From contig NC_058134.1 of assembly GCF_016433145.1 (NCBI RefSeq), forward strand, positions 306,385,373-306,449,372: a stretch of 64,000 nt of DNA. Reading direction: 5' to 3'. The position numbers and the translations under genes were made by a program. This DNA is from Gracilinanus agilis. Lineage: Eukaryota. This document shows positions 4,361-43,432 of the stretch, piece by piece; the first letter of the stretch is position 1; each line of letters begins with the position of its first letter. The notes under the pieces were generated by a model. It searched no databases. It was not told where the DNA came from and saw nothing but the letters and a program-made list of their open reading frames with translations.

Positions 4361-7300
4361 TGTAAGAGGGGAAAATGGGAATTATCATGGTTGGACTAGA
4401 TATTTAAGGTTTGGTTGCCAGATTGATTAACTTGATTTTGAAATAAAAGAGACCCAAGTCAGGATGACTTTTATGGTGGTTTATTTACAATTAGGAAGGC
4501 TGAAGGTGGGAAATTGAGAGAGAGAAACTCCGGCCCAGACCGGAGGCCCGAACCAGGTAGGAATTCAGAGGCCCCAGCAAAGGGGACACAGAGGTTAATT
4601 AAACAAGGCTTCTAGCCACAAGGCCTCCTCTAAGAAGAGAGGTAAGAGAGGCCTCCCTGAGGCTGGAGCCTCCAGAAACACCAAGGGAAGAGAAGGAGAG
4701 TCAGCCTGACTTACTCACATGACAATTCAGAGGGAAGCTATCTAAGGTCTCACCAGAGCTCCTTCAACACCAAGTTCAAAGCTCCAACAGCCTTCCATAG
4801 GAAGTTACCATCAAATTTAAAAGAGAGCATCTTTTGTCACTTCCTGCATCCATCTCCAGTTTCACATGAACAAATGGCAGCTTCAACACTGTTTTGGACT
4901 GCCCAGGGGGCAGCCACTTGTTTTTGATTTGTCACTTACTATCATATGTAGGTCACAGACCTCCCCCTCCCCACTTAATTCCAAGTTGGATGGGTGACAT
5001 TATTCCTGGTGGCTAAAGTCTACGAATGAGGGGCTGCTGGGTAGCTCAGTGGATTGAGAGCCAGGCCTAGAGAGGGGAAGTCCTAGGTTCAAATATGGCC
5101 TCAGACACTTCCCAGCTGTGTGACCCTGGGCAAGTCACTGGACCCCCATTGTCCACCCTTACCACTCTTCCACCTAGGAGCCAATACACAGAAGTTAAGG
5201 GTAAAAAAAAAAAAAAAAAAAAAAAAGAATGAATGAGGGTGAGCTAATTCCATTTACACAATCCTCCCTGATGATCCTTGGGTGCCTAGTCATCCCAAGT
5301 GATCACTTTACATAATCATCTTGTACCCACAAGGGTCTTCTAACTACAATAGTTAGAGATAAGAGGGGAATGGAAGAGAGAGAAAGCAAAACCAATGTTT
5401 TTCTCGGGGCACTGACAAAGAAAACAATTGGGGGCAGTCCCCTTTTGGCATAAAATGTACATTTAAAGTAATTTTTCAACCTCCTTCAGTTCAATCAGTT
5501 GTAACATTCTGGATCCATTCTGGATCTCTTGATGCAGCGTAGATTCTTCAGGCATCTTTCTGCAAACAGTTCATTCTCTGGATTAAGAAGTTAGCAAGCT
5601 TTTTCCCCTGTAAATTTTTTTCTCAAACAAAAATTTAAATCTTGGATTTTATAAAAAACACAATCCCCCCTGAATAGGGTGTTTAAAAAAGAAACACCCA
5701 GATCAGCTCAGGATACATGGTTGAGTTATGGGGGTGTATGAGTCAATTCAAAAGAAAAAACAAAAAACATAAAAGAAAAACAAATAGAAGAAAAAATTAA
5801 ACTTTGGGAGAAAGAAAAAAATCAAAATCAGAATCAACATATCAAAATCTATGTATGTAAAAATTTCTGAATAAACAAAAATAAATTCATAACAGGCCCT
5901 TGTATTAGGGTCCAATTAAGGGAATTTCTATCCCACTAGTCTGTAGGACAAAATGAAGTAATATTGCACTTACCCATTGGCAGCCAAGACTACAGGAAGT
6001 TGCCATTCTATAAAAGAGAAAAGAGGACCAGATTTATGTGCAAAGGAAGTGTCATTCCCTGGTCTGATTTACCTTCACTCTCCCGGATAGGGTGAGCCAG
6101 GATGATGGCCAACCTTCGATACTCGACTGGTAGTGTAGTAGGAAGTGTCCTACGTCTTAACATATGTTAAGCATCGCAACTTTGAGTCTTACACTAAATT
6201 CAAGTCCTTAGTACTGGCATGGAAGTTCCTCATTCCCACCTGTATTTGTATGGTCTTTTTGACCTTGTGCTCCTTGGCACTGTGCAGTTTCTCATCAATC
6301 CCATTGGGATTGGTTGGTCAGTCTCCATAACCTTGTGCCTTCTTAGCACTGTTTAGTGGCTCTTGTGTTCCCTTCTCCTGGAATCAGACAGAAACATTAA
6401 TCACAGTCCCATAATATTTACAAATACTTGGCAGGTTCCCAAAGTCTACCTTGTGAGTAAGCATTAATATTATAGCAAATATATAAACAATGAACTTATA
6501 TCACTGCAAAAATAAAAAGATTAATAGTGATTATATGTACTTTAAGTATAAGAAATGAGAAAAAGGGAAAAGAGTAAATTATTCTATTACAAAATAAAAG
6601 GAAAAGCAATAAGAAAATTAAAAATAAATTCAGGGAAAAAATACAATGTGATTCCAAAAACAGCATCCATTGTCTATGAACTGTTATCTCCAATGCATGT
6701 GACAAGAAACAGCCAACCAGTTTCAATAGAAGATGCTGTCTTTACATGTGAGTAATGAATCCAAAAGTCCTTTTCTCCCATTTTTTATAGCTATTGGAGT
6801 GGTTAATAATATTTGGAATGGCCCTTCCCATGAAGGCTGAGTTGCTCCAGTGCACTGGAAATTCTTTATATACACCTTGTCACCTGGGTTCAAGTCATGA
6901 AGTGAAAAGTCTATTGGTCCTGCTTGTACTGCAGTTCCGGATGCATGGATTTCAAGCAGTGTGTGCTGCAATTCCTGTATATAGGAAGCAATAGAAGTAT
7001 CTCCTCCTAATAGTGATGTATATGCAGGAGAAAAAGGCTTAGCCTGTATAGGGGGATGTCCAAAAAGCATCTCATATGATGAGATATGTAGATCTCCCCT
7101 GGGCCTGCTTCGAATCTAAGGTAAAATAGAGCCAAAGGGAAAATTTCAGGCCATTCTAAATGTGTCTCAGTGCATAATTTGCCAATCATAGTTTTAAATT
7201 CTCTGTTTCAACTCATCCTTTCTCATCCTTTCAACTTGGCCTGAGCTCTGGGGGTGATATGGTACATGGAATTTAGGGGTTGCTCCCAAACAGGAATATA

Positions 7301-7778
7301 TTTCAGATAAAACTGAATCAGTAAAACAACTTCCCCTGTCCGAATCAATACGTGCAGACAGGCCAAAACGAGGAATGATTTCTTTTAAAAGCACCTTGGC
7401 AACAAAAACCAATGTGGCTCGGGCAGTAGGAAATGCTTCTGGCCACCTGGTCAGTTGATCCACTATGACTAGACAGAATTTATATTGTCCAGCCTTTGGT
7501 ATTGTTATGAAATCAATTTGCAGGTGCTCAAAATGTGTGTAAGCCAGGGGACACCCACCAAAAGCCTTGCCTTGAAAGGCATGTTGGTTATATGCTTGGC
7601 AGGTAGGGCAAGCTGCACACACTTTAGAGGCTATAGTAGTTATGCCAAGAACTATCCATACCCTTTTAACAGAGTCCACAATGCCCTGGGTACCAAAATG
7701 ACCATTTTTATGAATTGATTGGCAAATTTTCTTCTTCAGGGGAAAATGTGTTATTAATTCTCCTTGTGGGGGGGGCAT
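4361..7778 (-). mobile_element. Truncated class I (ERV1-like) provirus: integrase remnant, internal region and 3' LTR
   Basis: ORF 7194-7778 has the integrase HHCC finger (H..GHFG...CPTCQ) and catalytic core (LQIDF, IVDQLTRWPEAFP, IDSDRG, YHPQSSGQVERM). It continues through frameshifts in 7007-7189 and 6723-7070 (WEGPFQILLTTP). A purine tract GGGAGGAT precedes an LTR spanning about 5260 to 4361 (TG...CA). Confidence 0.88.
5031..5226 (+). mobile_element. SINE1-type element with long poly(A) tail, inserted into the ERV LTR
   Basis: Same SINE head; poly(A) tail of over 20 nt; gaatgag duplicated on both flanks; LTR sequence is continuous across the insertion. Confidence 0.88.
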
Positions 7779-10640: not shown

Positions 10641-11379
10641 GCTTCCTAGTCCATTCCCACCCCCACCCCCCCCACACACACACACCCAATTTACAGAAGA
10701 GTCAAGCAAGGTACAGAGATTCAATCCCGTGCCTCGGGTCACAAAGAGGGGATCTGAACCCAGCTTCTGCTGCTTGTTCTTATTCCTCCCGTGACTGTTA
10801 GCAAAGAGTTTCATCTACCCTACCCCGGCTCGTCTCATCTGTAAAATAAGGACAAGGCTCATTAGAGTCAGAGTCGAGACTCGAACCCAGACCCTTCCTC
10901 AGCTAATGGTTCTCAAGGCCTGGCAATTCCTAGGCTTATAGACTGGGGGGGGGGGGGGGTGCCAGGGCCCTCTCATTCTCCCTGTGCTGGAGAGACCTTC
11001 GGAGATGGGTCTGGAGGACAGGCAAGACAGGGCAGCCCCAAAGTCCCGAGAGGTGACTGGGGGTGGGAGGGATGCTCTAGCCCCAGGGGTGGGGAATGGG
11101 AAATGAGCATCTATAGAGCACCTACTGTATGCCAAGCCTTGAGCTGAGTGCTTTAGAATCTTGTCATCTCGGTCCATCCCTACAGCCACCCTTTAAATGG
11201 TTTTGTATTTTAATAACACATTTTCACATATGTTTTCCGGAGGGACGTGAGCCATGCCGCCCCTCCCCCCATTTTGACTTTGCCTTGGCACCGGCCTAGC
11301 TTTTGCCAAACCATTTCCCAGCGTTCCCAGCAGCTTCTGTCAAGCAGGGAGCTCTTCGCCCCAAGCCGGGATCGTTGGC

Positions 11380-12620
11380 TTTATCGGAGGCCACTCGGCC
11401 CATCTAGGCCCCCGCTGCCCCTCTTGTCTCTTGGCAGGCTGTGTGGATGGTGGCCACTTCACGGTCCAGCTGGAGATCCGGCCCCGCCGCCCGCCGCCGC
11501 CCGCCGCCGCCCACCCGGCCGCCGCCGCCCACCCGGCCGNNNNNNNNNNNNNNNNNNNNNNNNNNNNNNNNNNNNNNNNNNNNNNNNNNNNNNNNNNNNN
11601 NNNNNNNNNNNNNNNNNNNNNNNNNNNNNNNNNNNNNNNNNNNNNNNNNNNNNNNNNNNNNNNNNNNNNNNNNNNNNNNNNNNNNNNNNNNNNNNNNNNN
11701 NNNNNNNNNNNNNNNNNNNNNNNNNNNNNNNNNNNNNNNNNNNNNNNNNNNNNNNNNNNNNNNNNNNNNNNNNNNNNNNNNNNNNNNNNNNNNNNNNNNN
11801 NNNNNNNNNNNNNNNNNNNNNNNNNNNNNNNNNNNNNNNNNNNNNAGAGGCTGAGGGCACTGCCGGCAGTCTGGAGCCCGGGAATGGGCCTCTCTGACCT
11901 CGGGAGGGGAGGGGGAACCTGTGACCCAAAGTCCAGCTCCGCCCCCAGCAAAGGAGTATTTCTGGTCTGGCCTGGTTGGGGAGCTGCCATATCCTCCTGT
12001 GAAGAAAGGAAGACAGCAGCATTCCGAGAAAGCTCTGGTATCGTCCCTCTGGCAATCTCTGCCTCTGGCTGCCCACCTCTCCCCCACTGCCCCGCTTCCC
12101 GTGGGGGCCCCTCACTGCTCTCCTGGAGCCTCCCTCGCCCGGCCTTCCTAAGGGCTGCCCCGTGCCCTCTCCTGGACCCCTCGGTCGCCCTCGTCCCTTG
12201 CCCCCCCTCACGCACCTCCTCCCCAATCTCTCCGTCCCAGTGGAATATGGGGGGACGCGAAAAGGGAGGGAGCAGGGGACTTCCAGGAGGTTCGGGCCCC
12301 AATTCAGGGCCCCTTCTCTGTCCTCCCACACCTGTTCTGGTCCCACTCTTCTCCTCCGTGCCGCCTGTGGCTCCGCCAGCTGCCTCCCTTCAGACCCTTC
12401 CTCCTCCACCATGCTCCGGGGGCTGCCATTATTTATCATCCTCCTGGGCCTTCTGGACCTGTCACTCTCTGGAGTCTGGACCAGGTCAGTCTAGTCCCGT
12501 TGGACCCCTCGGGCCTCATTCCAGAAATGCCAGGACCCGGCATACCCGGGACCCCCCTCCCCATACCTCAGTACCCAGAGCCGACGACTGGGAGGATGAG
12601 CCAGGGGCGGCAACGTGAAG
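11380..12620. promoter_or_regulatory. GC/CpG-rich island spanning an assembly gap, immediately upstream of the candidate peptide gene
   Basis: Dense CpGs and (GCC)n-like repeats at 11480-11539; 306 N at 11540-11845. Confidence 0.55.
11540..11845. other. Assembly gap (306 N)
   Basis: Run of N flanked by extreme GC content. Confidence 1.
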
Positions 12621-13402
12621 GCGAATGGGGGGCCGAGGATACCTTCAGAAGGCCTGCCAGCTCTGCTGGGAGAGGGCAGGGAAGGCACAGGCCCACGAAG
12701 ACTGGAACGGAGGCCCCAAACTCCCAGAGAGTCGAGATGAAAGGGTTCAGAGACCAGAATAAGGGCCCTTCTGTTCCTGGATCTGATCCTAGATCTGGTC
12801 CACGCTGTTCCACCTCCCAAGGACAGACCAAAAGGAAATGACTAGCTCAGGGCTGGATGGTAGGAGGGCAGAATCCATCCTACTGCGAATGGAAACAACA
12901 TAACATCCCTAGGTTTGAGGCCTCTCTCCACCTTCCCGGGGCCTGCCGAGGAGAAGGGGAAGGAGGCTCTTCCTAGAGGCTGGGACTAGAGGGAAGGACC
13001 CTGGAAGCCTACAGGCTAAAGGTCTGACCACGAGAGGCTAAGAGTGAAGTGAGAGCAGGGAGAAAGGATTCTGGGGGGCCGTGGGGCTCAGTTCGCAAGC
13101 CTGGGAGACTTGCTCTTGGAGGGCTGCCAGCAGGGAAGCGAGGGTTGGAGCCTAGGCCAAGGGGAGGAGCTGATTCTGCGAGTTAGGCCTGGCCCAAGGT
13201 GCTGATGGAATGGGCCTATGGGCCTCCTTTCCCTCCCAGCCCTCTCCCTGAGGAGGCGCCGGATGATGCTGCTTACCTTCCAGCAAATGCCCTTGAGTTG
13301 GCTGAAATGCCCCCCATCCCCATAGGAGGCCGAGAAAAACGGGCCTTAGAAAAGGGCTGCTTCCTTGAATTATGTGACCCCGAAGAACCAGTCAATATCT
13401 GA
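12411..13402 (+). CDS. Candidate unannotated secreted peptide precursor, 78 aa: MLRGLPLFIILLGLLDLSLSGVWTSPLPEEAPDDAAYLPANALELAEMPPIPIGGREKRALEKGCFLELCDPEEPVNI
   Basis: Kozak ccaccATG at 12411. Coding exon 12411-12484 ends AG|GTCAGT (phase 2). Acceptor ggcctcctttccctcccag| at 13239 opens exon 13240-13402 in the matching phase. Hydrophobic signal-peptide-like N-terminus, R-X-K-R site, two Cys spaced C-x4-C. AATAAA at 13570-13575 is followed by a GT-rich tract. Confidence 0.7.
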
Positions 13403-13569
13403 GTGGGGCCCAAATCCTGAAGCTCCTGCTCCTGGTGACTTCGGCGGCTCTAAGTCCTTTGGCTAAGGGGCCCCCAGAACCTAGCCCCGGCTCCTGAGGT
13501 CGGGTGGGGGGAGGGGGAGCTGGGCCAGGATGGGATGAGCCACTCAGGCCAGACCCAGAGCAACCCATC

Positions 13570-13575
13570 AATAAA
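13570..13575 (+). terminator. Poly(A) signal of the candidate peptide gene
   Basis: AATAAA 168 nt after the stop, followed by ttgtgtatgtgt (downstream GU-rich element). Confidence 0.65.
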
Positions 13576-14059
13576 GACTCACTTGTGTATGTGTACAAGC
13601 ATTAGCGTCTTGGGGACTCTCACCAGCTTGGGGAGGGGTTCAGGATTGAGAAGGAACTGGGGTGGGGGGCTCAGATGCCTTGGGAGGGACAGGGATTAGG
13701 ACTCTGAAGGAACAGGGGGCTTTGGGAGTCAGGTGTTTCAGGGATTAGGACTGGGAGGATGAGGCAGAGATGGAAAGGGAGGGAGGGAGAATGCGGGGTT
13801 AAGAAGGCCTTTAGAGGGGGCAGCTGGGTAGCTCAGTGGATTGAGAGTCAGGCCTAGAGCCTGGGAGGTCCTAGGCTCCAATCTGGCCTCAGATACTTCC
13901 CAGCTGTGTGACTGTGGGCGAGTCACTTAAGTTCCATTGCCTACCCTTACCACTCTTCTACCTTAGAGTCAATACACTGTATTAACTCCAAGATGGCAGG
14001 GCTCTGTAATGAGGCAGAGCTAAAGAATTTCTGATTATAATATCAAGGCTCCAGCTGTG

Positions 14060-15200
14060 GAAAGGTTGGCCTCAGGGCTCAGAGATCAGGGATTGGCATT
14101 CAGAAGAAACAGCAAAGAGCTCAAGTGGGTCAGGGCTTGGCAAATCCATGTCATGAGAGTGTGGCTGGAGTCATGGGCCAGGAAGGGGGTCACATCGATT
14201 GCTCTTAGTTCCTATAACAATAAGTACAAACCAGGGAGCTGAGAAGAAGAAGGAGCACTCAGGCCACTGGGAGACCTCTTTGGAGAAGGCTGCAGACTTG
14301 GGAAGAGGGAGCGGGGCAGGAAATAAGACCAGAGGCAGGGTTGGAAAGGTTGTGAAGAAATGGGCCTTTATTGCTATTCTGCCTTGGAATCAATATATTG
14401 CATTGATTCTGAGACAGAAGGGAAGGCTTAAAAAAAAAAATGAAGCAAAGTCAGCAGTCAGGGGACAGGAGTCAGTCACAACCTGCCTGTTCTGGCTGGG
14501 AGGGAACACAGGCTCCAAGAGATGAAATGGGGAGTGCACATTTCAGGGATGAACCAGACTACCCAGGAGGTAGAGCAGGTGAATGGAGGGGAAGCCACGG
14601 GAAGTTTGTGTAGAGAGGTGGGCGATGGGAAATCCCTGAGGAAGGCCGATAGAAGGCAATGGAAGCCAGAACATCATCCTGGAGACCAAAGGGAGCCATT
14701 GCACGCTTTATGAGAAAGGGAGAGCTGCGATCACACCCATCCCTCTGAAGATGGTTTGGGGAGCTTTATGGAGATTAGATCAGAGAAAGGAGAGAACAAT
14801 TAGGAGATGATCGTACTAGCCTGGGCAAGAAGTGATGAGGGTCTGAACTGCAGGAGAGAATTCGTGAAGTCTTCACTGAAGGATGAGGGAGAAGAAAAAG
14901 ATCCCAAGGCTTCAAAACTGGTGGCCTAGAAGGATGAGACAGGCGAGCCAGGAGGAGCTGGGGAATATGATCGTCCCTGTTCAGGACACAGTGACCAGGA
15001 GATATCTGGGGGGTGCTCGTGTGGAGGTGTCCAAGCAGATTTGGGAGTCTAGTCAACCATTCAGCAACCCTTTCCTGGTCAATTCAATCTCATCCACTAG
15101 AAAAAAAGCATTCCTGAAGGGCTTGCTGTGAGTACGGTTTGTGCTAGGCACTGGGGGACACGAAGACCAAACCAAAACAGTCCCTACCTTTAAGAAGTTT
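14060..15200 (-). mobile_element. Ancient LINE-2 fragments
   Basis: Purine-rich antisense L2-type text (gatcccaaggcttc...ctggtggcctagaaggatg..., gtgctaggcactgggggacac). Confidence 0.6.
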
Positions 15201-18076
15201 GCATTCCTCTGGCTTAAGAGACTCTACCTTCCTGGACTTCAGTTTCCCTAACTTTAAAAGGCAGAGACTGGACTTAATGACTTTTTTTTTTAATCCTTCC
15301 CTTCCATCTGTGTATTGGTTCCATGGCAGAAGAGCAGCAAGGACTAGGCAGACTTGCCCAAGGTCACACAGCTAGAAAGTGTTTGAAATCAGATTTGAAC
15401 CCAGGACCTCCCATCTCTAGGCTTGGTTCTCTGTCCAGAGCCATCTGTCTGCCTCTGGACTTGATGTCTTCTGTGGCTCCTGATCTCGGCACTGCCCTTA
15501 TTCTTCCCCCTAGGGCTAGTAGTAACCTTTCTGCCACTTGCCAGCTGTCTCTGTATGTGAAGGCAGCCTATCTGTCTGCAGGAGTCCTCCCTCAATGGTG
15601 TAAATATGTTCCATGATAGTAAGTGTTTTTTTGAGGGAAGGGTCTCTAATACACATTGTTTACACCACAAGTCTCATCATCCCTTCGGATCCTGCCCTAC
15701 CTCCGGCCATGGGAGGGTTGAGGGCTCAGGCTTGGCAGCAGCAAAGGCCAGTCATAGCCACTGATAGCACAGGCAATAGGGAAGCTTTCTCTCCCCCAGC
15801 ACTGTGAGAGCAGCCCCATTCCACTCTCTCCTAAGATGCCGTGCTCTCTGCCATGGCCCTTACTTAGCCCCCCACACGGTAGGATTGACTCCATTGCTCC
15901 ATTGCCCTGGATGGAGCTGCCCCTGTGCCAGCAGATCAGCCGGGCCTGATGGCTGCCCGGGGATCTCGAACCCCAGGGCAGGCGATGCGTTGGCACAGGC
16001 TCTGTGGTTCCTGAAGGGTGGCTACAGCAATTCCAGGTTCAGCCTGAAAGGGTGGGGAGCGAGTCAAAACTGAGCCCAAGACTGGTAAGACAAGGTGTTG
16101 GGGCAGAATTCCTTACTTGAGGCAGTCATTTTCCCCATTTGTTCACACACAGCCTGAAGCTCCCAGGCAAGGGCAGAGTCTGGAGCCAGGCAGAAGAGGA
16201 GGCTCCAAACCCTCTGGGGGAGAGATGGGGTGGGGGTGGGGGCAGGGAGCTCACAGCTGACAGTTGGCATTTGACTTGCCTCTCTCGCCTTGTCCCTCTG
16301 GGAAGGACTTACATTCTCCATCCCCCCCCCCCCCCCCCAACTCTGGCTCCTGCCTCATCCCCAGGAGAGCTGCCCTTGGCTTCACACTGGGTGCAAGTGG
16401 CTACCTCCCACCAAGGTGCCTGATCCCTTGAGTTCAGGGATCTGGACCAGAGATCCTCAAACCTGAGGCCCCTAATCCTAACCTCATGACAAGGACCCCA
16501 ACCCAAAGGGGCAGGAACCCCCAGCAGAGCCCCTTTCTGACCCTCTGGGCTGGCAGTCCTTGGCCTTCTTGGACCTAGCGAGGGAGGGGCTCTGCAGGGC
16601 CTAGACTGGACTGAACAGAACAATCCTCTCCTTTCCCTTTGTTTCTTCCCTCAGCATCTCCATTGAGCCCCACACTAAAGGCTTCTTGCTGCCCTATCAC
16701 CAAGTCCCATGCTCCCTAAGATCCCAGCATGTGCTGTCTTCTAGGCCCCCTTATGCCTGGAGCACAGTCCCCCATCTTGAGTGTTCACGGCCCAACCACT
16801 CCTGCAGTTGTCCATCTAGCAGGGGCCCAGCAGGGCTCTGTGGAAAGGCCACCAAGCCCAGGGAAGCCTGTGCTTCTTTCCAAGAGAGACTCCAAAAGCT
16901 GTCCTGGGGCAGCCCACAGGTTTGACGTCAGGACCTATGACAACCCTTCCGTCCTGACAGATCCCTCTCTGGCTCCCTCTCTACCCTTCGCTCAGGATCA
17001 GTAGTCCTCTGGGTATGCAAGAGACCCAGAGAGAAAGAAAGAGGGAGCCAGAGGGGAGAAGGAGAGGAAGACAGAGACACCGAGAAAGAAAAATGGGCCA
17101 ATGCAGTGTGGCTCCAAGATATGGCTGGAGTCTTCCTAGGCCAGAGGCCCAAAGAGCCTAGCATGGGGTTGGGAGTAGCTTCTCTGCCCTGTCCAGGCCT
17201 CCTCTGGAGCCTCCGTCCAGGTCTGGAGCACAGCTTTTAAGAAGGAAACTGACCAGCTGCAGAGTCCAAAAGGTGGCCAGGGCAGAACAGGGCCTTCAGC
17301 CTAGGGCTCATGAGGGTCCCTGGCCTGGAAGGGCTGTCAGGAGGCAGCTTGACGCCAGGGCAGAGCAAGAAGCAATGGGGCAAGAGGGATGGAAATGCTG
17401 ATTTGGGCCCAATGTCTGTCTGAAAGAACACTTCCAAGCAGGAGCTGCTTTGAGAGGTGGTGAGCTCCCCATTCTTAGCAATCATTTAGGGGGTGGGCAC
17501 TTGCTGGCGAAGTCTCGTGCCCAGACCTCCCTTGCCATACACAACTGTCTTTTGTCTGGTATGAGCAGAGAAGGGCCTCCTGATTTGAGCCTGACTCACT
17601 TTATACTCGGCCGTGCTGAAGCCTGGGAAGGTGGGATACTCAGCTCCGTGATGCTGCTGCCTCTGATCAGTGCCGGTGTGTCGCCAGCCTGGACTCTCCG
17701 TCCAAGATCAGGGCCCTGCTCCTCGACCCTAACGACGATGCCCAACAGCATCTGCTTCTTCAAAGCCCATGCTCTGAGGCCCTGGGTAGGCTGGCAGAGA
17801 GGCCTGGAGGCTAAGAGAGGGACAGCAACTGCCAAGGGCATGACAGCTCTAGGCCGAGGCAGAGCTGGGTTTCTGCTGCCCTTTCCCAGGCAGCAGAGGA
17901 CCCAGGCTTAGGGAGAGAGGGGCCAGCCAGTTCCTAGGCTGCTCAAGTCCAGCTTCTCACTCCTCTGAGACCTGGCTGGCTCTTCTCCCCTCCTAAGTCT
18001 GCCTCAACCCCAGGCCTGCTCCACCCTCTGCTGCCCACAAGCCCAAGGATGGAAAAAGGCCAAAGACATTCTTTTC

Positions 18077-18082
18077 TTTATT
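18077..18082 (-). terminator. LMF2 poly(A) signal AATAAA
   Basis: tttatt on + strand about 315 nt past the LMF2 stop codon. Confidence 0.7.
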
Positions 18083-18395
18083 TAGAAAACGAGAGGAAGA
18101 CTTCTGTCCATCCATCTTACACACCAGAAGGAAGTCCGGGTGCGTCTGGCCTGGGCAGCGCAGCCCAGCCCAGGAGAGTCAGACAGTCTCACTAAGGCAT
18201 TTGAAGCTGGCCCTGAGAATGGGCCCAGAATGCAGCAGATGGGGGAGGCCAAGAAGGTCCTGAGCTTGGTGGGGGCTGGTGGCGGTGGTGTCCCAAAAAC
18301 ATCCTGTCTCCACCTTTCCAGCCCCACAGGCCCCTGCTTCCCCAGAGCAGGGGAGCCATGCCTGAGAAGCAGCCTAAGATCCAGGCTCAACAGTG

Positions 18396-21300
18396 TTACT
18401 TCTTTCTCCGGGTTCCCTTGGAGCTGTTTCCAGCCCCCTCTGGGCCCTGGGGCTGGGACCGCTCCTTACCCACCTTCTCCTTCTGAGAGGGTGGCTTGTT
18501 CTTCTCACCACCCACTGTTTCAGGCCTCCGGGGCCCGGGAAACAGCAGTGCCTGGAAGATGTGAATGGCCACTACCGAGCAGATGAGGCCCCAGAGCAGC
18601 ACTGGGGCAGCCAGGGGAGTCAGCTGGTTCCGCAGCCAGCGCAGGGCTTGAGGTAGCGGGCTAGCTGAGCTGGGTGGGGGTCGGCCTGGGCTCTTGTCCT
18701 GGGGAGAAGAGGGAGGTGGATATCTCGCCGACGGCCCCCAACAACTCTGGTAATCATTGTGGACCTTTTGGCAATGTTAGAAGCTTTAGCAAGACTCTCC
18801 ATTTCACATGTGGAGAAACTGAGTGTCAGAGAGGGAAAGGGACTCCTCCAAAGTCAGACAGGAAGGGGGTAAGCTGCCGGCTCTCCCGAGGCCCCAGCCC
18901 TCGCCCTGGCCACACACACGTGTGTCCCTCAGTGCTCTGCCCCAGCCCCAGCCCAGCCCTGGCCCCTCCGCCACTCCCTACCTGAAGGCCAAACTGTGCC
19001 AGCAACGACTCCAGCTTAGGGTCCCCCAGAGTCACCTGGGGAAAGAACTCCTCAGACCACTTTCGCCGCCACCACTGGCTAAGAGACAGGAAAGGGAATG
19101 GAGGCCACTTCATGCCCTGCCCTGCTCCAAGCCTGCAAAGGGCTTGCCATGAGAAGGTCAGTGTGGCTGCGCTGCTGCTCTCCATGCCCCCTCCTTGGCC
19201 TAAGGCCTCACCCCTGCCCCCTGCCCCCACCAGGGCCTGACTCCTGCCCCCTGGTCTTCACCTTTGCTCGCCAGGCCGTGAGAACCAGTACTTGTAGAGC
19301 TGGGCCCGGATATACGTGGGTGGCTGCTCCCAGAATGGGTACCTGGAGGTGTCCACTTGTAGCAGGCGGATCACTGGATTGGGGAAGGAAGCTACTGAGA
19401 ATGCTGCGCCCTCCCCAAACCCCCCTTAAAACCCCTGCTCCCTCCCCCCGGTCCCTCTCCTCACTAGGCCCCCCACTCTCTCCTGGCCCTTCTCCTCATT
19501 AGGCCCTCCGCTCCCTCCTGCTCAGCCCTTCTCCTCACCCTGTGCCTTCCCCTGAAGGAGGCGGTAGACGAGACTGGAGAACCAGGGGCTGTGGGTGTGA
19601 TGGCCCAGGGCGGCAAACCACATCTGCCAATCCAAGCGGGGCTGATGGGGCACCACGAGGGGGGGAGCCACGCTGACATTCCCTGGTTTGTACATGAACT
19701 CGATCTCCTTGGGGAGCCAGGAAAGGCAAGAGGTGAGAGCTTGGCCGGCACAGTCTCCCCGACCCTACCGTCCCAGGTCCCTAAGGGCTTCCTGTGCCTG
19801 CTGGGTCCTCGGGGTATGGAGACAGGGATATCTCTCAGGATTTACTCCCTGATGGGAGAATAAGGCACAGGACAGGGAAGTGTGAGTCAAAGGAGGCAGC
19901 TCAAAGAGGTGCCAAGAACTAGGCAACATCTTCTTTTGCTAGGGAATCAGAGAGGGCTTCCCAGAGGAGGCCACATGCCAGGTGGAGGATGCTGAAAGAT
20001 GCGGACGGAGTGCATCCCAGAGGGGTGTGATGGGAAGCAAGGGATGGGGAGGGCTTGTGGGAATGCCCAGAGGCCAGGCAGGGGAACAGCAGCTCCAAGA
20101 ACAGTAGGAAGAGCCTATGCTTGACCCTCAGGTAATGGAGAGCCATTGAGGAATATCTCAGTAAGAGAGTGACACAGTCACATCTGTGCCTGAGAAAGAC
20201 TCTTTGGGAAGCCGGGAGGAGACCAGACAAGATGGGGAGAGGAGCCTGGGCCCTCGTGATTGTCCAGGTGCCTGCGGGCTCCTGTGGCAGTGGCGTGGGG
20301 AGGATTCGGGGGACTCAGAACTGAGAGAATGTGGCAACAGCTGCAATCTGGGAGATGAGCCCAAGTCCCCCGCCAGGGCCCAGACTGGCATCCCAGGGCC
20401 CTCACCGTCCAGCTCTGGCCGTCGTAGCTGCCCTCTAAGACCACCTCAGGCCGCCCAGCCAGGCCCGTCATGCGTCGGAAGAGGCCGTAGGAGTTAGCCA
20501 GCTGCAGGTGTTCCACGGTGCTGAAGAGCCGGTGGGCCCCGGCCCAGAGCTGCCTGTTGGTGCCCGGCTCCAGGTAGGTGTAGGGCACCTGAGTCACAGG
20601 ACAGTGTGGGTGCCCCTTGCCCAGCCATGCCAGGCCCTACAGCACCAAGGCCCACCCCTGCCCCGTCCCCACTCACCAGGCTGATCGTAAACATGGCCGC
20701 GGTGGCCGCACCGACGATGGACAATTGGACAGCAGCCTTGAGCTTCCCCGGCCACCTGCGGATCCGGGCACACCTGGGGACGAGGATGACCCTCTCCTGG
20801 GGCTGCGCTTCCCGTCCCACCTCCTCTCGCCCTCCAGATTGGCTGGACCACAAGGATGGAGCTGGACAAGGGGCCCCACCCCCCCACCCAGGTACCTGTA
20901 CAGGGCGCCGAGTAGCACCCAGAGCAGCGAGGCAATGCCCAGCCACACGGAGGGCATCGTGACCACCTTCAGCCACTGGGAAAATTCGTGAAAAGTAAAG
21001 GCTGTGGAGGGGGAGGAGCGGGTCAGGAGGGGAGTGGACGGTGACCCCCTTCTCCCACGTCCCAGTCCACTCCTCCCTGCCAAGTCCAGAAGCTCACCTC
21101 TCCCTCCTCGACCTACCTGTTTTGGCCTGGATGCTGCCCCATTCTTTGTCCAGTTCCAGGTCAAAGTAGTGAACCGTACCGTAGGCCAGGAGCCCATAGA
21201 CGGCCGCCTCCAACAGCAGGGTCGAGGCGGTCAGCAGCCGCCCAGTCCATGCTGCAGGGACAAAGACAGAAGGTGGGTGCTGGGGCCCAAGATCTGTGGA

Positions 21301-31200: not shown

Positions 31201-34200
31201 GATCCAGCAGCAGGTGGAGCCCTGTGGAGGGTGAGGGTGAGGGGTGACAGAGGGCAGTGAGGTTACTCAGTTTCTATACCTCTAAAATGGGGACAATGTT
31301 GTCTAGAGTTCCCACCTCACAGGCTTTGGGGAAAAATAGCTTTGAAGTACTTTACAAACTTTCAAGGGCTCTAGTGATTCTTTGGATTATTCCCAGATCA
31401 GTCAGAAGTGTGTGGGGCCCTTAGAATTTCAGGTAGATGAACCACAGTTAAATGAATATGGGCGGGTCATCTGGGCTTGTTCCCAGGACACCCTGGGCCT
31501 GCCTGAGTTTTTTGGCATGTTTTACCCTAGTTCCAAGGGATGGTGTAAAGCCTGTGAAGTGTGGTAAAGTCCTCAGGTCCTTGCTGCCATCTGTCCTTGG
31601 CTGACCTCACCCAAGCTCAGCTCTGTTCCCAAGTGGTGGTGACCCCTTTCAGTGGGGTAGCAGGGTCCCAGCTGTCACTCTGGGGCTCTGGGCCAAATTC
31701 AGACGAGCTGGTTTTGTTGGATTGTCTATTAGTCTTTGGGGGTGGTACAATAGGCAATAAAGGTGATGTCCTCGGTGTTCTCTCCTAGGCCACCCCGAAA
31801 CCAAAGAGGTACACTCTGCGGGGCAGAGCCACTGCTGCTATCCCCCATCCATCGTGGTACCAAAAGGCAAGAAGAGCTGGAGTTTGGGGGGGGGGCTGCT
31901 GGGAGGTTGGGAGGTGCTGGGGGATAGGTGGGGGGAGAGGATCCCTTCCAAAATTTCTCTGGTTCTAAACAGGCCTGACTCCTTTCCTGGGGCACCTTGT
32001 GGGCAAAGCTCCCCCAAAACTCTCCGATGAGGCAAACAGCCCAATATCTAGCCTTACTGGGGATCACACAACAGAGCCCCAAGTACGTGGCTCTTGGCTC
32101 AGTGTCTCCTATGTGTCATGTGCCTTAGGAATCCCGAAATCACTGGCAGAACCTGGACCCCTTTGACTCCCTGGAAGGCAAGCCCTTCAAGAAAGGTAAT
32201 GAGAAATGGGGGTGAAGGTGGGTGTGCACTGTGGGGGAGCCTCTAGCAGAGCCAAGGGAATCTAAGACCCAGAGGGCTTTGGTCCCTGTCCCCAGGGCTC
32301 TGGTGGCCCAGTGGGGAGGCTGGCCCGGGGGCAGCCACCTTTTCTCCTGGTGTCCATCCCTTTTGGGCAGCTCCTTTGCCTGACTTCCTGGCTCTGCTTC
32401 CCAGGTAGCCCTTACTCTTTGCCACAGCACTTGGAAGAGAACTCATCAGGCAAACGGAAAAGGAAGACCTCCACTAGACTCCAGGGCTTCCATGAATGGT
32501 ACCTGGCAGCTTGTGAGTAGTCCTAGGTGGGTGGAGGCCACAAGGGGCTAAAGTGATGTCCAATGGGTACCCAGCTGATCACTCACTTCTCTCTTCAGAT
32601 AGTGGCGGTGAAAACTCCAAGAAACCTCAGCCCAAAGGCCCCACGTTTGCAGGTGAGCCTGGGGAAGAGCCCGAAACCCCTTGGGGGGTGGCAAGAGGGG
32701 TAGCAGGCCTGAGACATCACGGGGGGCTTTAAACTGCCCCCCCGGACCAGAACCAGAGGCCCCAGCGACATCTCTTTGTACAGACATGGAAGCCCTCTAC
32801 TGGAAGCATCTCAAGAAGCAGATGGATACTCTTCGGAAGCTGCGGAGGGGAGAGGTGAAGGCAGTGGGGGCTAGACAAGCATGTCCATGAGGAGAGAGGC
32901 AGGACAGCAGCGTTGAGCAGCCTCTTGCTTGGGAAGCTACTGAGGCACTGGGGAGAATGGGGCCAGAAGCAACAAGCCCCAAGGCCCCAGCCACTGTCCT
33001 TAGCCCTGCCAGGTCCCTGAAGTCTGTCTCTCTCTGGGAAGGCAGGTCTCCAGGCCTTCTGCCACCATTCCTCCCTGTGCAGAGCAGATGTTAGAGGGAT
33101 GTTGGCAGAAGGGCATGAAGCCATCTCCAGGCCCATGAGGCTAGAGGACTAACCTCGTTAGCCTTGTGTGCTTCCAGGTCACTGAGCAGCAGCTGACCAA
33201 GGTCCAGGAAAGACTGCAGGCCTTAGAGGAGGAGCGTGTGGAGGAGTCCCTGGAGCACCTTGGAGGGGGAGGTAACCCCTGGGGCCCAGGCTGTCCTTTG
33301 GCAGCCCTGGTGGGGAAGGAAAGGGGAGGGGGGCACTGGGGCTGGTGGATGGGTGGTGCCAGCTCCCCCCATTCCCCTTCTTAGATAGCTTCCTGGAGCT
33401 CGAAGACGTGGAGCCCATGGAGTCCTTGGAGGAAGCTCCAGGTAGGCCTAGGGGCTTGGGGGTATGTGGAATGGCGGGAGGGAAAGGCCACAAAAGTTGT
33501 CCCAATGTGGAGCTGACCTGTAGCCCTGCCTTCCTCCCCCAGAGCCAGAAGTCATCCCTCCACTGAGCTACGAGGAGTTGGTCCAGAGAAATGTGGTAGG
33601 TTCTGCTCTAGAGCCAGGTGCAAGGGTCAGTGGGGTGGGCACACACCTGGCCCAAAGACCTCCTGAGCCCCCTTTCCTTTTCTCAGGAATTATTTATTGC
33701 CAACTCTCAGAAGTATGTTCATGAGACTGAGCTGTCTCAGCGTATCCGTGACTGGGAGGATACCATTGGCCCCCTACTCCAGGAACAGGTGAGGATGGGA
33801 CCCTGGGCCTCCTCGCATCCAGCACCTGGCAGACCTCTGGGCTTCCTTCACCCACTGGGGGGTGGCAGTGGCTGGTGGTGGCAGCAGGTAACCCTTGCTC
33901 CTTTCCTCCCTCCAGGAGGAGCATGTTCCATTTGACATCCATAATTACGGGGACCAAGTGGTAGCCAGCTTTAAGCAGCTCAATGAGTGGTGTCCCTTTG
34001 CTGAGCTGGTGGCTGGCAAGCCGGCCTTTGAGGTGTGCCGCTCTATGCTGGCCTCCTTGCAGCTGGTGAGTAGGGGCTGGGCACTGGGGAGGGGCCCCAA
34101 GCCAGCAGGGCCAAGGCCTGTTCCCAGCCTCCCTTTCCTCCCACCAGGCCAATGACTACACCGTGGAGATCGCCCAGAAGCCTGGCCTCGAAGAGGCTGT

Positions 34201-34649: not shown

Positions 34650-35405
34650 TCAGGAGCGCACACTGCGGAAGGCGGCCATGTGACCCCTCACACTGGCCAC
34701 GATCTGCTCCTCCGTCTTGCTCCGGCCATAGTAGTCTGTGAAGAGCCCATCAGGGTTGAGCAGGTAGATGATGATGGAGTGGTCCACGATGTAGTCCTGA
34801 TCCTCGTCCCGAGGCCCAGCGCTGTAGTAGACCCGGTAGGCCTGACTGGCCTGGCGCACCTGCTCGGGGGTGCCCGTGAGCCCCAGTAGCCGAGGGTGGA
34901 ACTCGCGCACGTAGCGGCCCACAGCGGCCACGTCGTCCCGTTCGGGGTCCACGGTGATGAAGAGGGGCTGCACGGAGGGCAGGCCTGGTTCGGCCTCCAG
35001 CGTGCGGACCACGGTGGCCAGCTTCTCTAGCTCCTCCGGGCACACGTCTGGGCAGTGCGTGAAGCCGAAGTACAGGAGCACCCACTGACCCACGAAGTCA
35101 GCCTTGCACCGGGGCTGGCCCATGTGGTCCACCAGCTGGAAGTCACCCTGGCCCACAGCAGCGCTGCGGAGGGCCTCTAGCCGCCGCTGCTGCCGCCGCT
35201 GCTCTTTCTCCTCACGCGCGGAGAGCCACGCTGCAGCCAAGCCGGCCCCAAAGAGCCCGGTCACCAGCAAGCGGGTGCGCAGCCCTGGGGCGCCCAGGGG
35301 ACCCCTGCTGCCAGGGCCGGCAGAGCCTGAGGAGCAGGGACGCGCAGCCCAGCGCAGGCGAGCCAGGGCGAGGCGCCAGAGGCCTGGAGCCCGGACGGGC
35401 CACAT
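34650..35405 (-). CDS. SCO2: Cytochrome c oxidase assembly copper chaperone SCO2, 251 aa, single coding exon
   Basis: Arg/Leu-rich mitochondrial-type N-terminus, TM segment [16 protein letters not shown], copper motif [34 protein letters not shown]. Acceptor just upstream (exon starts 35419) and donor GTAAG at 35795-35799 define a non-coding exon 1. Confidence 0.97.
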
Positions 35406-42400: not shown

Positions 42401-43432
42401 AGGACTGCCCCATTCATTGCCTGCTTAGCAGGGCCCCCAGTCAGGATCCTTTGCCCAATACCTGCTCTGGACTTTGTACCACCGAGAAGCCGGGGATGGC
42501 CTCCAGCTTGTCCAAGGTGCCCCCGGTGTGCCCCAGTCCCCGCCCACTGATCATTGGGACCTGTGTGGAGGAGCCCAGCCCCCAGCCCACCACTGAGGGT
42601 TGAAAACTCCCAGGCTTCCTTCTTCCATAGACTCAGCTCTCATCTGCGGTCTGTGGCTTGAAGGAAGCCCGGGCTGAGGGGGTTCTCAGCCAGCCCACCC
42701 CCAAATTCCGGCCGGCCTCGAGGCGGGCCAGGCTGCTCGGAAAACTGGCCCAAAATGGGAGTGCCGAGCAAAGAGTCGATTGGGGCAAGAAGCACTTAAT
42801 AGGAAGGAGCCCCATTTACGTCCCCCTCCCAGGCTCCCCAGGGATACCTTGAGCCCCCGGGGCCGGGGGCAGGGGGCTGACCTTGCAGCCGCAGGCGGCC
42901 AGAGCAGGTGCCAAGACCAGGCTGACTTTGTCCCCTACACCCCCTGTCGAATGCTTGTCCACCAGCAGCCCTCCCCAGGCCTCGGGCCACTGCAGCTGCT
43001 GCCCAGACTCAGCCAGAGCTCGAGTCAGAATCTCTGTCTCGCCCAGGTCCATGCCTTGTAGTCGGATGGCCATTAACATGGCACCTGCAGGCACAGGGAG
43101 AGCCCTTGGCGCAACAGATTCTGCGCGACTTTGGGGAACCCTTCCAGGGGCTGGGAAGGTGGGATCCCTGGGGAGGCCAGGCCTAGGGTGCTGGCTCTGG
43201 GTCCCGTGGCGGGCAGAGGCAGAGAGGGAGGGGTGTCACCTATCTGCGCCTCCTGCACGGTGCCCTCCGTCAGCCCTTGAACAAAGCTCCGGATCTCTGC
43301 GTCCTCCAGGCGAGCCCCATCTCTCTTCTTCTTAATCAGCTCCGGGATGGTGCTAGGGTTCTGGGGGCTGGAGTCTGGGGGAGGGATGGAGGAGAGGGCC
43401 GAGTCAGAGGGGCCCCAGCACCGAGGGGACAT
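36477..43432 (-). CDS. TYMP: Thymidine phosphorylase, 9 coding exons, ~477 aa (start codon uncertain)
   Basis: Exons: 43240-43432, 42882-43084, 42462-42560, 42162-42291, 41965-42083, 38896-39058, 38575-38805, 38242-38382, 36477-36631; phases match, 1434 nt, no internal stops. Motifs: [86 protein letters not shown]. Confidence 0.96.

What the first reader, a model, noticed from the sequence alone, without database searches (positions are those of the whole stretch)
13331..13402. C-x4-C ring peptide and exon layout suggest a diverged adrenomedullin-2-locus peptide
Seen: the predicted mature peptide ALEKGCFLELCDPEEPVNI has G-C-x-L-x-x-C. Established: adrenomedullins have a six-residue ring preceded by Gly (ADM GCRFGTC, ADM2 GCVLGTC). 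CGRP/ADM-family genes have a non-coding first exon and a signal-peptide exon ending in phase 2. ADM2 lies on the same strand just left of LMF2 in human and mouse. Differences: this peptide is acidic, stops 8 residues after the ring, and lacks the amphipathic helix and the C-terminal Tyr-Gly amidation signal needed for CLR/RAMP binding. The ring size also matches urotensin II (CFWKYC), vasopressin/oxytocin and ELABELA, and KGCF recalls CNP (GLSKGCF). Inference: either a truncated, repurposed ADM2 duplicate with a different or no receptor, or an unrelated orphan family.
Basis: inference. Interest (0 to 1): 0.8.

Follow-up and report, generated by a model that had tools for sequence, protein, structure and literature searches.

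The report
Orphan secreted-peptide gene candidate in opossum
Next to LMF2 this opossum makes a real spliced RNA whose 78-codon reading frame looks like a small secreted hormone precursor, but nothing ties it to adrenomedullin 2 or any known peptide family, and whether it is translated is unproven.

Summary
Window 12411-12484 plus 13240-13402 (+) splice in frame into a 78-codon ORF. It encodes a signal-peptide-like start, an acidic spacer, R-E-K-R, and ALEKGCFLELCDPEEPVNI with a Cys-x4-Cys ring. RNA contigs of the same species show the exact GT..AG joint 12484|13240, and a related species shows it too.

The adrenomedullin-2 reading is not supported.
- 120 vertebrate ADM2 proteins, including bilby, echidna and platypus, all have G-C-x-L-[GS]-T-C, exactly 33 residues after the ring, and a [HY]SYG end.
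- This peptide lacks the Thr, the 33-residue tail and the amidation end, and its net charge is -4.
- Its ADM2-like ring Leu is Phe in two relatives.
- Pfam and custom ADM2 profiles find nothing in the peptide or anywhere in the 64 kb.
- Only the phase-2 intron is shared.
- In human and platypus the left neighbour of LMF2 is MIOX, not ADM2.

No homologue exists in about 15 billion proteins, and the gene is unannotated in GCA_016433145.1.

Best reading: a lineage-restricted orphan prepropeptide candidate, about as likely translated as not. Against translation are weak constraint, abundant unspliced RNA and possible upstream ATGs.

The parts
11200..11539 (.). CpG-rich flank next to an N run (11540-11845). 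Possible promoter of the transcript; not shown.
   Evidence: CpG observed/expected 0.71-0.85 and GC up to 0.78. The N run was left untouched.
11950..12410 (+). Transcribed sequence continuous with the ATG exon: either a long 5' UTR or unspliced upstream RNA. It contains an upstream ATG at 12247 in strong context; another lies at 11884.
   Evidence: X11 contig 11950-12484 and X10 contig 12022-12374. Upstream ATGs and the overlapping 107/228-codon ORF are.
12411..12484 (+). First coding exon part: Met1-Thr24 plus 2 nt. Signal-peptide-like (MLR, a 12-residue hydrophobic core, SLS|G).
   Evidence: Contigs of three runs end exactly at 12484, the fork between spliced and unspliced RNA.
12485..13239 (+). 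Phase-2 GT..AG intron, 755 nt.
   Evidence: Joint '12480 to 13236, cut +4, GT..AG' in X10 and X11; loose end in X14.
13240..13402 (+). Second coding exon part: Ser25 (split codon) to Ile78 plus TGA.
13331..13342 (+). R56-E-K-R59, a furin/proprotein-convertase type R-x-K-R site.
   Evidence: 13324-13353 is identical at nucleotide level in organism C (X14 record 14 has 0 differences).
13343..13399 (+). Predicted C-terminal 19-residue peptide ALEKGCFLELCDPEEPVNI, pI 4.05, charge -4.
13358..13375 (+). Cys65-x4-Cys70 ring codons.
   Evidence: In organism C no change is listed at either Cys codon. Ring residues change: L67F (13364, also in organism A) and L69I (13370, 13372).
13324..13326 (+). Alternative acceptor (ccccatAG|G) used in organism C. 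It skips 86 nt, shifts the frame and stops after 14 codons.
   Evidence: X14 record 14 and its loose end at 13324, depth 12 against 30.5 for the main joint; sequence.
13403..13590 (+). 3' UTR with AATAAA at 13570-13575.
   Evidence: Contig ends are at 13535, 13542 and 13588.

Best explanation
A lineage-restricted transcription unit, seen in this opossum and two related organisms, lies tail-to-tail with LMF2. It produces a spliced, polyadenylated RNA whose 78-codon ORF has the generic build of a secretory prepropeptide and belongs to no known peptide family.

If it is translated (inferred, not shown), these steps follow:
- The hydrophobic N-terminus takes it into the ER.
- Signal peptidase cuts near Ser20/Gly21.
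- A furin-type convertase cuts after R-E-K-R59.
- A 19-residue, strongly acidic peptide with a Cys65-Cys70 six-residue disulfide ring is released, together with an acidic Pro-rich spacer.

It is not an adrenomedullin/CGRP-family ligand, and it should not act on CLR/RAMP in the way ADM2 does.
For: - Exact splice joint in two runs of the same organism and in a relative.
- Kozak-type ATG and good splice sites.
- The N-terminal hydrophobic core ranks 1/397 among ATG starts in the GC-rich part of the window.
- The R-x-K-R site, both Cys codons and the whole CDPEEPVNI-stop tail are unchanged in organism C. This is partly inferred from which differences the table lists.
- No indels over 13075-13386 in organism A, while the neighbouring intron and the 3' region carry 10 and 7 gap letters.
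- The substitutions known in organism C are 4 synonymous and 4 conservative replacements (T24A, A46T, L67F, L69I).
- Orphan status: no Pfam family, no homologue in the 5.8-billion-cluster search, only LRR-repeat artefacts in 1.84 billion representatives, and nothing in the ESM Atlas.
- Not ADM2.
Against: - There is no evidence of translation.
- Constraint is weak. In organism A the exon regions are about as diverged (8-10%) as the intron (about 8%). The 4:4 synonymous to replacement count in organism C is not significant (binomial p about 0.14, my estimate).
- In X11 unspliced RNA (depth 5.5-6.6) exceeds the spliced joint (2.9).
- Organism A's run shows only unspliced contigs.
- If transcription starts upstream of 12247 or 11884, two strong-context ATGs open an overlapping 107- or 228-codon ORF ahead of the main ATG.
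- About 28% of joints in organism C use a frameshifting acceptor.
- NCBI's annotation of this genome holds the neighbouring SCO2 protein but not this one.
Confidence: 0.5

Rival explanations
1. A non-coding (or not productively translated), poorly spliced transcript from the CpG island left of LMF2. On this reading the 78-codon ORF with its signal-like start is fortuitous or very young and has no function.
For: - A high unspliced fraction and upstream transcription continuous with the ATG exon.
- Overlapping upstream ORFs.
- Exon divergence no lower than intron divergence in organism A.
- A frameshifting alternative acceptor in organism C.
- No homologue anywhere and no annotation.
- Open frames of 53 codons are common at this GC content (about 15% by my estimate; see the many ORFs).
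Against: - The hydrophobic start ranks 1/397 and sits on a Kozak-type ATG.
- The frame is kept across the intron.
- R-x-K-R, both Cys codons and the stop are kept in organism C.
- No indels in the coding part in organism A.
Confidence: 0.38
2. A diverged orthologue or tandem duplicate of ADM2, truncated after the ring.
For: - It lies on the ADM2 side of LMF2 and on the same strand as ADM2.
- It has two coding exons with a phase-2 intron after the signal-peptide exon, as in platypus and rat ADM2.
- G-C-x-L-x-x-C shares 4 of the 5 invariant ring positions of ADM2.
- No canonical ADM2 exon lies in this 64 kb.
Against: - ADM2 is extremely conserved. All 120 sequences have Thr before the second Cys, 33 residues after the ring and [HY]SYG at the end, and a marsupial (bilby) has the canonical form. 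None of these features is present here.
- The ring Leu is Phe in organisms A and C, so the match is probably a derived coincidence.
- Custom ADM2 profiles, Pfam PF00214, the signal-peptide profile and 3' UTR frame tests are all at chance level.
- No DNA similarity to ADM2 loci.
- The intron sits after codon 24, against codon 34-42 in ADM2.
- A shared phase has a 1 in 3 prior.
- MIOX, not ADM2, is LMF2's neighbour in human and platypus.
Confidence: 0.08
3. A member of another C-x4-C or disulfide-loop family: urotensin II/URP, vasopressin/oxytocin, ELABELA, CNP, or a miniature Gla-type loop (C-x-x-E-x-C-x-x-E-E).
For: Ring size; 'CF' as in urotensin II; 'KGCF' as in CNP; the spacing of Glu residues recalls the Gla-domain loop. 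These are resemblances from memory only.
Against: Pfam-A, which holds these families, gives no match at E<=10 for the 53-residue exon product, the 23-residue REKR+peptide, or the pieces. The peptide is acidic, whereas ELABELA and CNP are basic. Its 8-residue tail is unlike urotensin II. The E-x-x-[ERK]-E-x-C signature of Gla domains is absent (by eye).
Confidence: 0.04

Closest known systems
Adrenomedullin 2 / intermedin (ADM2; CGRP-calcitonin family, Pfam PF00214)
   Same: A secreted precursor with two coding exons and a phase-2 intron after the signal-peptide exon. Six-residue disulfide ring preceded by Gly, with Leu at ring position 3 in this species. Same chromosomal neighbourhood in a broad sense.
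   Different: Lacks the invariant Thr before the second Cys, the 33-residue helix/tail and the Tyr-Gly amidation end. Net charge is -4 against 0 to +5. No profile match. The intron is 10-18 codons earlier. The ring Leu is not kept in relatives.
Urotensin II / URP
   Same: A C-terminal cyclic peptide with a C-F-x-x-x-C ring released after a basic site, and an acidic residue content near the ring.
   Different: No W-K-Y pharmacophore, 8 residues after the ring instead of 1, no Pfam match, and a different locus (the locus is from memory).
ELABELA/APELA-type 'hidden' peptide genes
   Same: A short ORF with a signal peptide and a C-x4-C ring on a transcript that annotation pipelines do not call as coding.
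   Different: ELABELA is basic and conserved across vertebrates. This ORF is acidic, has no homologue outside close relatives and shows weak constraint.
Taxonomically restricted (orphan or de novo) small secreted-protein genes
   Same: No detectable homologue, short, fast-evolving, low or leaky expression and inefficient splicing.
   Different: Unusually complete prohormone grammar: Kozak ATG, signal peptide, R-x-K-R, and paired cysteines in the released peptide.

Membership tests
ADM2 / CGRP-adrenomedullin family | Ring G-C-x-L-[GS]-T-C with invariant Thr before the second Cys | tested here: not met
   120/120 ADM2 sequences have Thr and Leu. Here the ring is G-C-F-L-E-L-C, and the Leu is Phe in organisms A and C.
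ADM2 / CGRP-adrenomedullin family | 33 residues after the ring (amphipathic helix plus receptor-binding tail) | tested here: not met
   120/120 have exactly 33 residues; here there are 8. No remnant lies in other frames of the 3' UTR (p=0.42 against shuffles).
ADM2 / CGRP-adrenomedullin family | C-terminal Tyr-Gly-stop amidation signal | tested here: not met
   120/120 end in [HY]SYG; here the end is V-N-I-stop.
ADM2 / CGRP-adrenomedullin family | Match to the family profile (Pfam PF00214, or an ADM2-specific HMM) | tested here: not met
   0 Pfam families at E<=10. Custom mature and full-length ADM2 HMMs run with --max do not place gene X among hits with E up to about 5-26.
ADM2 / CGRP-adrenomedullin family | Two coding exons, with a phase-2 intron after the signal-peptide exon | tested here: met
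   Platypus has 42 codons + 2 nt and rat has 34 codons + 2 nt. Gene X has 24 codons + 2 nt. The phase is shared; the position is not.
ADM2 / CGRP-adrenomedullin family | Orthologous position (SBF1-ADM2-MIOX-LMF2) | tested here: inconclusive
   LMF2, NCAPH2, SCO2 and TYMP are confirmed. No SBF1, ADM2 or MIOX signal lies in the 12 kb to the left or the 5 kb to the right of the gene. The true ADM2 of this genome could not be located with these tools.
Convertase-processed secretory peptide precursors (generic class) | N-terminal signal peptide | tested here: inconclusive
   It has an n-region Arg, a 12-residue hydrophobic core (rank 1/397) and small residues at -3/-1. No dedicated predictor was available.
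Convertase-processed secretory peptide precursors (generic class) | Basic cleavage motif before the bioactive peptide | tested here: met
   R-E-K-R at residues 56-59, with identical nucleotides in organism C.
Convertase-processed secretory peptide precursors (generic class) | Translation, secretion and processing in vivo | not testable with these tools
   Only RNA contigs were available.
Urotensin II, vasopressin/oxytocin, natriuretic peptides, ELABELA, Gla domain | Match to the family profile | tested here: not met
   Pfam-A scan at E<=10 returned no family. Very short profiles have little power.

The most novel reading that the evidence does not exclude
Didelphid opossums (perhaps marsupials more widely) carry an undescribed, unannotated peptide-hormone gene. 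It has arisen in the interval left of LMF2, where monotremes and placentals have MIOX. Its product would be a 19-residue acidic cyclic peptide with its own, unknown receptor.
Probability: 0.3. Interest if true: 0.65.

Novelty: new member of a known kind. Interest (0 to 1): 0.38.

Why it matters
If the ORF is translated, it would be a rare documented case of a young, lineage-restricted mammalian prohormone-like gene with complete processing grammar. That would be useful for studying how secreted signalling peptides arise, and it would be a candidate ligand for orphan receptors in marsupials. The negative result also matters: a Cys-x4-Cys ring plus a phase-2 signal-peptide exon is not enough to assign a peptide to the adrenomedullin family, whose real members are almost invariant from fish to mammals.

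Tried and rejected
- **Family scans.** Pfam on the exon product, the signal exon, the REKR+peptide, the frame-1 3' UTR piece and an X-joined composite gave nothing.
- **Homologue searches.** Word-indexed searches with the 53-residue exon product and the full 78 residues gave nothing. phmmer against 1.84 billion representatives gave five hits, all long repeat proteins; the one I inspected is an LRR-type repeat whose weak matches add up, so I rejected them. The ESM Atlas best score was 0.60, which is meaningless.
- **A frameshifted ADM2?** In frame 1 of the 3' UTR I saw '...W..GP...AP.D.....SFG-stop', about 30 codons after the ring, which resembles the ADM2 tail. Local alignment against human AM2 (sequence verified on PDB 6uva_P) scores at the mean of dinucleotide shuffles and of other window segments (p about 0.4). 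PDB and Pfam searches of the composite found no AM2. Rejected.
- **Signal-peptide resemblance.** 9/22 identities by eye to echidna ADM2; p=0.10 against composition-preserving shuffles. Rejected.
- **tblastn without composition correction.** Thousands of Pro/Gly/Arg-rich artefacts all over the GC-rich window. Discarded.
- **blastn of platypus and rat ADM2 loci against the window.** Only CA repeats, poly-C and MIR fragments.
- **Gene X against platypus and rat ADM2 loci.** Nothing.
- **Literature.** No paper on ADM2 in opossums or on a peptide gene beside LMF2.
- **Not done: orthologous DNA from other marsupials.** Reaching the interval needs a full-length multi-exon LMF2 protein as a reference, which cannot be built without typing a long sequence. 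Large marsupial assemblies also returned no DNA.
- **Probe provenance.** Scoring was restricted to the verified mature part.

Full report
**What is there.** The window is marsupial DNA syntenic with human 22q13.33. Pfam identifies these exons:
- an LMF-family exon at 20181-20636 (-);
- an NCAPH2 exon at 33618-33935 (+);
- SCO2 at 34653-35405 (-);
- TYMP exons near 42816-43094 (-).

An exact look-up of the SCO2 protein places the window on a 313-Mb chromosome of NCBI assembly GCA_016433145.1. From memory this is the agile gracile opossum.

Joining 12411-12484 to 13240-13402 gives a 78-codon ORF across a phase-2 GT..AG intron of 755 nt.

**Transcription and splicing.**
- Four small runs of the same organism hold 64-84% of the locus's sampled words.
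- When laid on 11846-13780, two of them show the exact joint 12484|13240.
- A run of a roughly 95%-identical organism (C) carries the exon-1 tail as the loose end of its exon-2 contig and has no intron coverage.
- Contigs end near the AATAAA at 13570.

Three caveats come from the same table.
- In X11 the unspliced paths (depth 5.5-6.6) exceed the spliced joint (2.9).
- Organism C also uses an acceptor at 13326 that shifts the frame, at depth 12 against 30.5.

If the RNA starts upstream, ATGs at 11884 and 12247 open an overlapping ORF ahead of the main ATG.

**Is the ORF more than chance?** The start has a Kozak-type context. Its hydrophobic core ranks first of 397 ATG-started open starts in the GC-rich part of the window.

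In organism C the nucleotides encoding GGREKRALE are identical. No change is listed at either Cys codon or in the tail and stop. The known changes are 4 synonymous and 4 conservative replacements: T24A, A46T, L67F and L69I.

In organism A (about 90-92% identity) the coding part has no indels, but it is as diverged as the intron. The difference table was truncated, so its cysteines could not be checked.

This amounts to suggestive but not significant evidence of protein-level constraint.

**Test of the ADM2 idea.** A probe built on human AM2, whose mature part I verified against PDB 6uva_P, retrieved 280 ADM2 proteins. 120 of them were listed, including bilby, echidna and platypus.

| Feature | 120 listed ADM2 proteins | This peptide |
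|---|---|---|
| Ring | G-C-x-L-[GS]-T-C | G-C-F-L-E-L-C |
| Residues after the ring | exactly 33 | 8 |
| C-terminal end | [HY]SYG | V-N-I-stop |
| Net charge | 0 to +5 | -4 |

The peptide shares only G, C, L and C with the ADM2 ring, and that Leu is Phe in both relatives. The other tests also failed:
- Profiles built from the 119 mature regions and from the full proteins were run without filters against all 2811 six-frame pieces of the window, the 78-residue product and an X-joined composite. The best E-value was 0.18, a chance GTCQV in a repeat. Gene X was not among the top hits.
- Pfam-A, which also holds the urotensin, natriuretic, vasopressin and Gla families, found nothing.
- The signal-peptide and 3' UTR resemblances I noticed are at chance level.
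- ADM2 loci of platypus and rat share only simple repeats and MIR fragments with the window.

What is shared is the gene layout. Platypus and rat ADM2 have two coding exons split in phase 2 after codons 42 and 34. Gene X is split in phase 2 after codon 24.

**Synteny.**
- The human order is SBF1, ADM2, MIOX, LMF2 (PMC9224546).
- Platypus has SBF1(-), ADM2(+) and MIOX(+) within 21 kb.
- The gene studied here sits where MIOX would be, tail-to-tail with LMF2.
- Neither MIOX nor SBF1 nor ADM2 is detectable in the window.
- Bilby ADM2 has no called gene within 10 kb.
- Whether this opossum keeps a canonical ADM2 further left could not be determined.

**Orphan status.** I found no homologue in any of these searches:
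- the 5.8-billion-cluster collection, queried at 29-93 and 43-136 residues;
- 1.84 billion representatives, which gave repeat artefacts only;
- the ESM Atlas.

The exact protein is absent from about 15 billion sequences, although the neighbouring SCO2 of the same assembly is present.

**Verdict.** The ADM2 interpretation fails every family-defining test except intron phase.

The remaining reading is a lineage-restricted, unannotated transcript with a textbook prepropeptide ORF. I put translation into a secreted, furin-processed cyclic 19-mer at about one in two, a non-functional ORF on a leaky transcript at about four in ten, and ADM2 descent below one in ten.

Noticed in passing
window 13600-18800 and the whole window: No MIOX exon lies between this gene and LMF2, or anywhere in the 64 kb, although MIOX is LMF2's neighbour in human and lies 5 kb from ADM2 in platypus. 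Bilby ADM2 also has no called gene within 10 kb. MIOX may have moved or been lost from this neighbourhood in marsupials.
   Followed up: partly
window 7194-7778 (-): A 194-codon ORF with retroviral integrase domains (rve, Integrase_H2C2) in the AT-rich repeat block left of the gene. It is an endogenous retroelement remnant and I did not examine it further.
   Followed up: no
window 13324-13326: Organism C splices about 28% of its joints to an acceptor 86 nt inside exon 2. This would give a 38-residue product ending in a basic 14-mer instead of the ring peptide. The acceptor is not seen in the two runs of the window's own species.
   Followed up: partly
window 11884 and 12247: Two in-frame upstream ATGs in strong context open a 228- or 107-codon Pro-rich ORF that overlaps the main ATG, if transcription starts in the CpG island.
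   Followed up: partly
window 11540-11845: An N run sits inside the CpG-rich block directly upstream of the gene, with GC-rich repetitive flanks.
   Followed up: no
window 13800-13990: A marsupial SINE-like element lies just downstream of the poly(A) site.
   Followed up: no
L001 10001-11862; L002 10001-11025: Several database 'ADM2' proteins from run assemblies (P0032, P0078, P0093) start inside the intron and read through the acceptor into 'C-R-E-P-P'. This independently shows the phase-2 split Arg codon of ADM2.
   Followed up: yes
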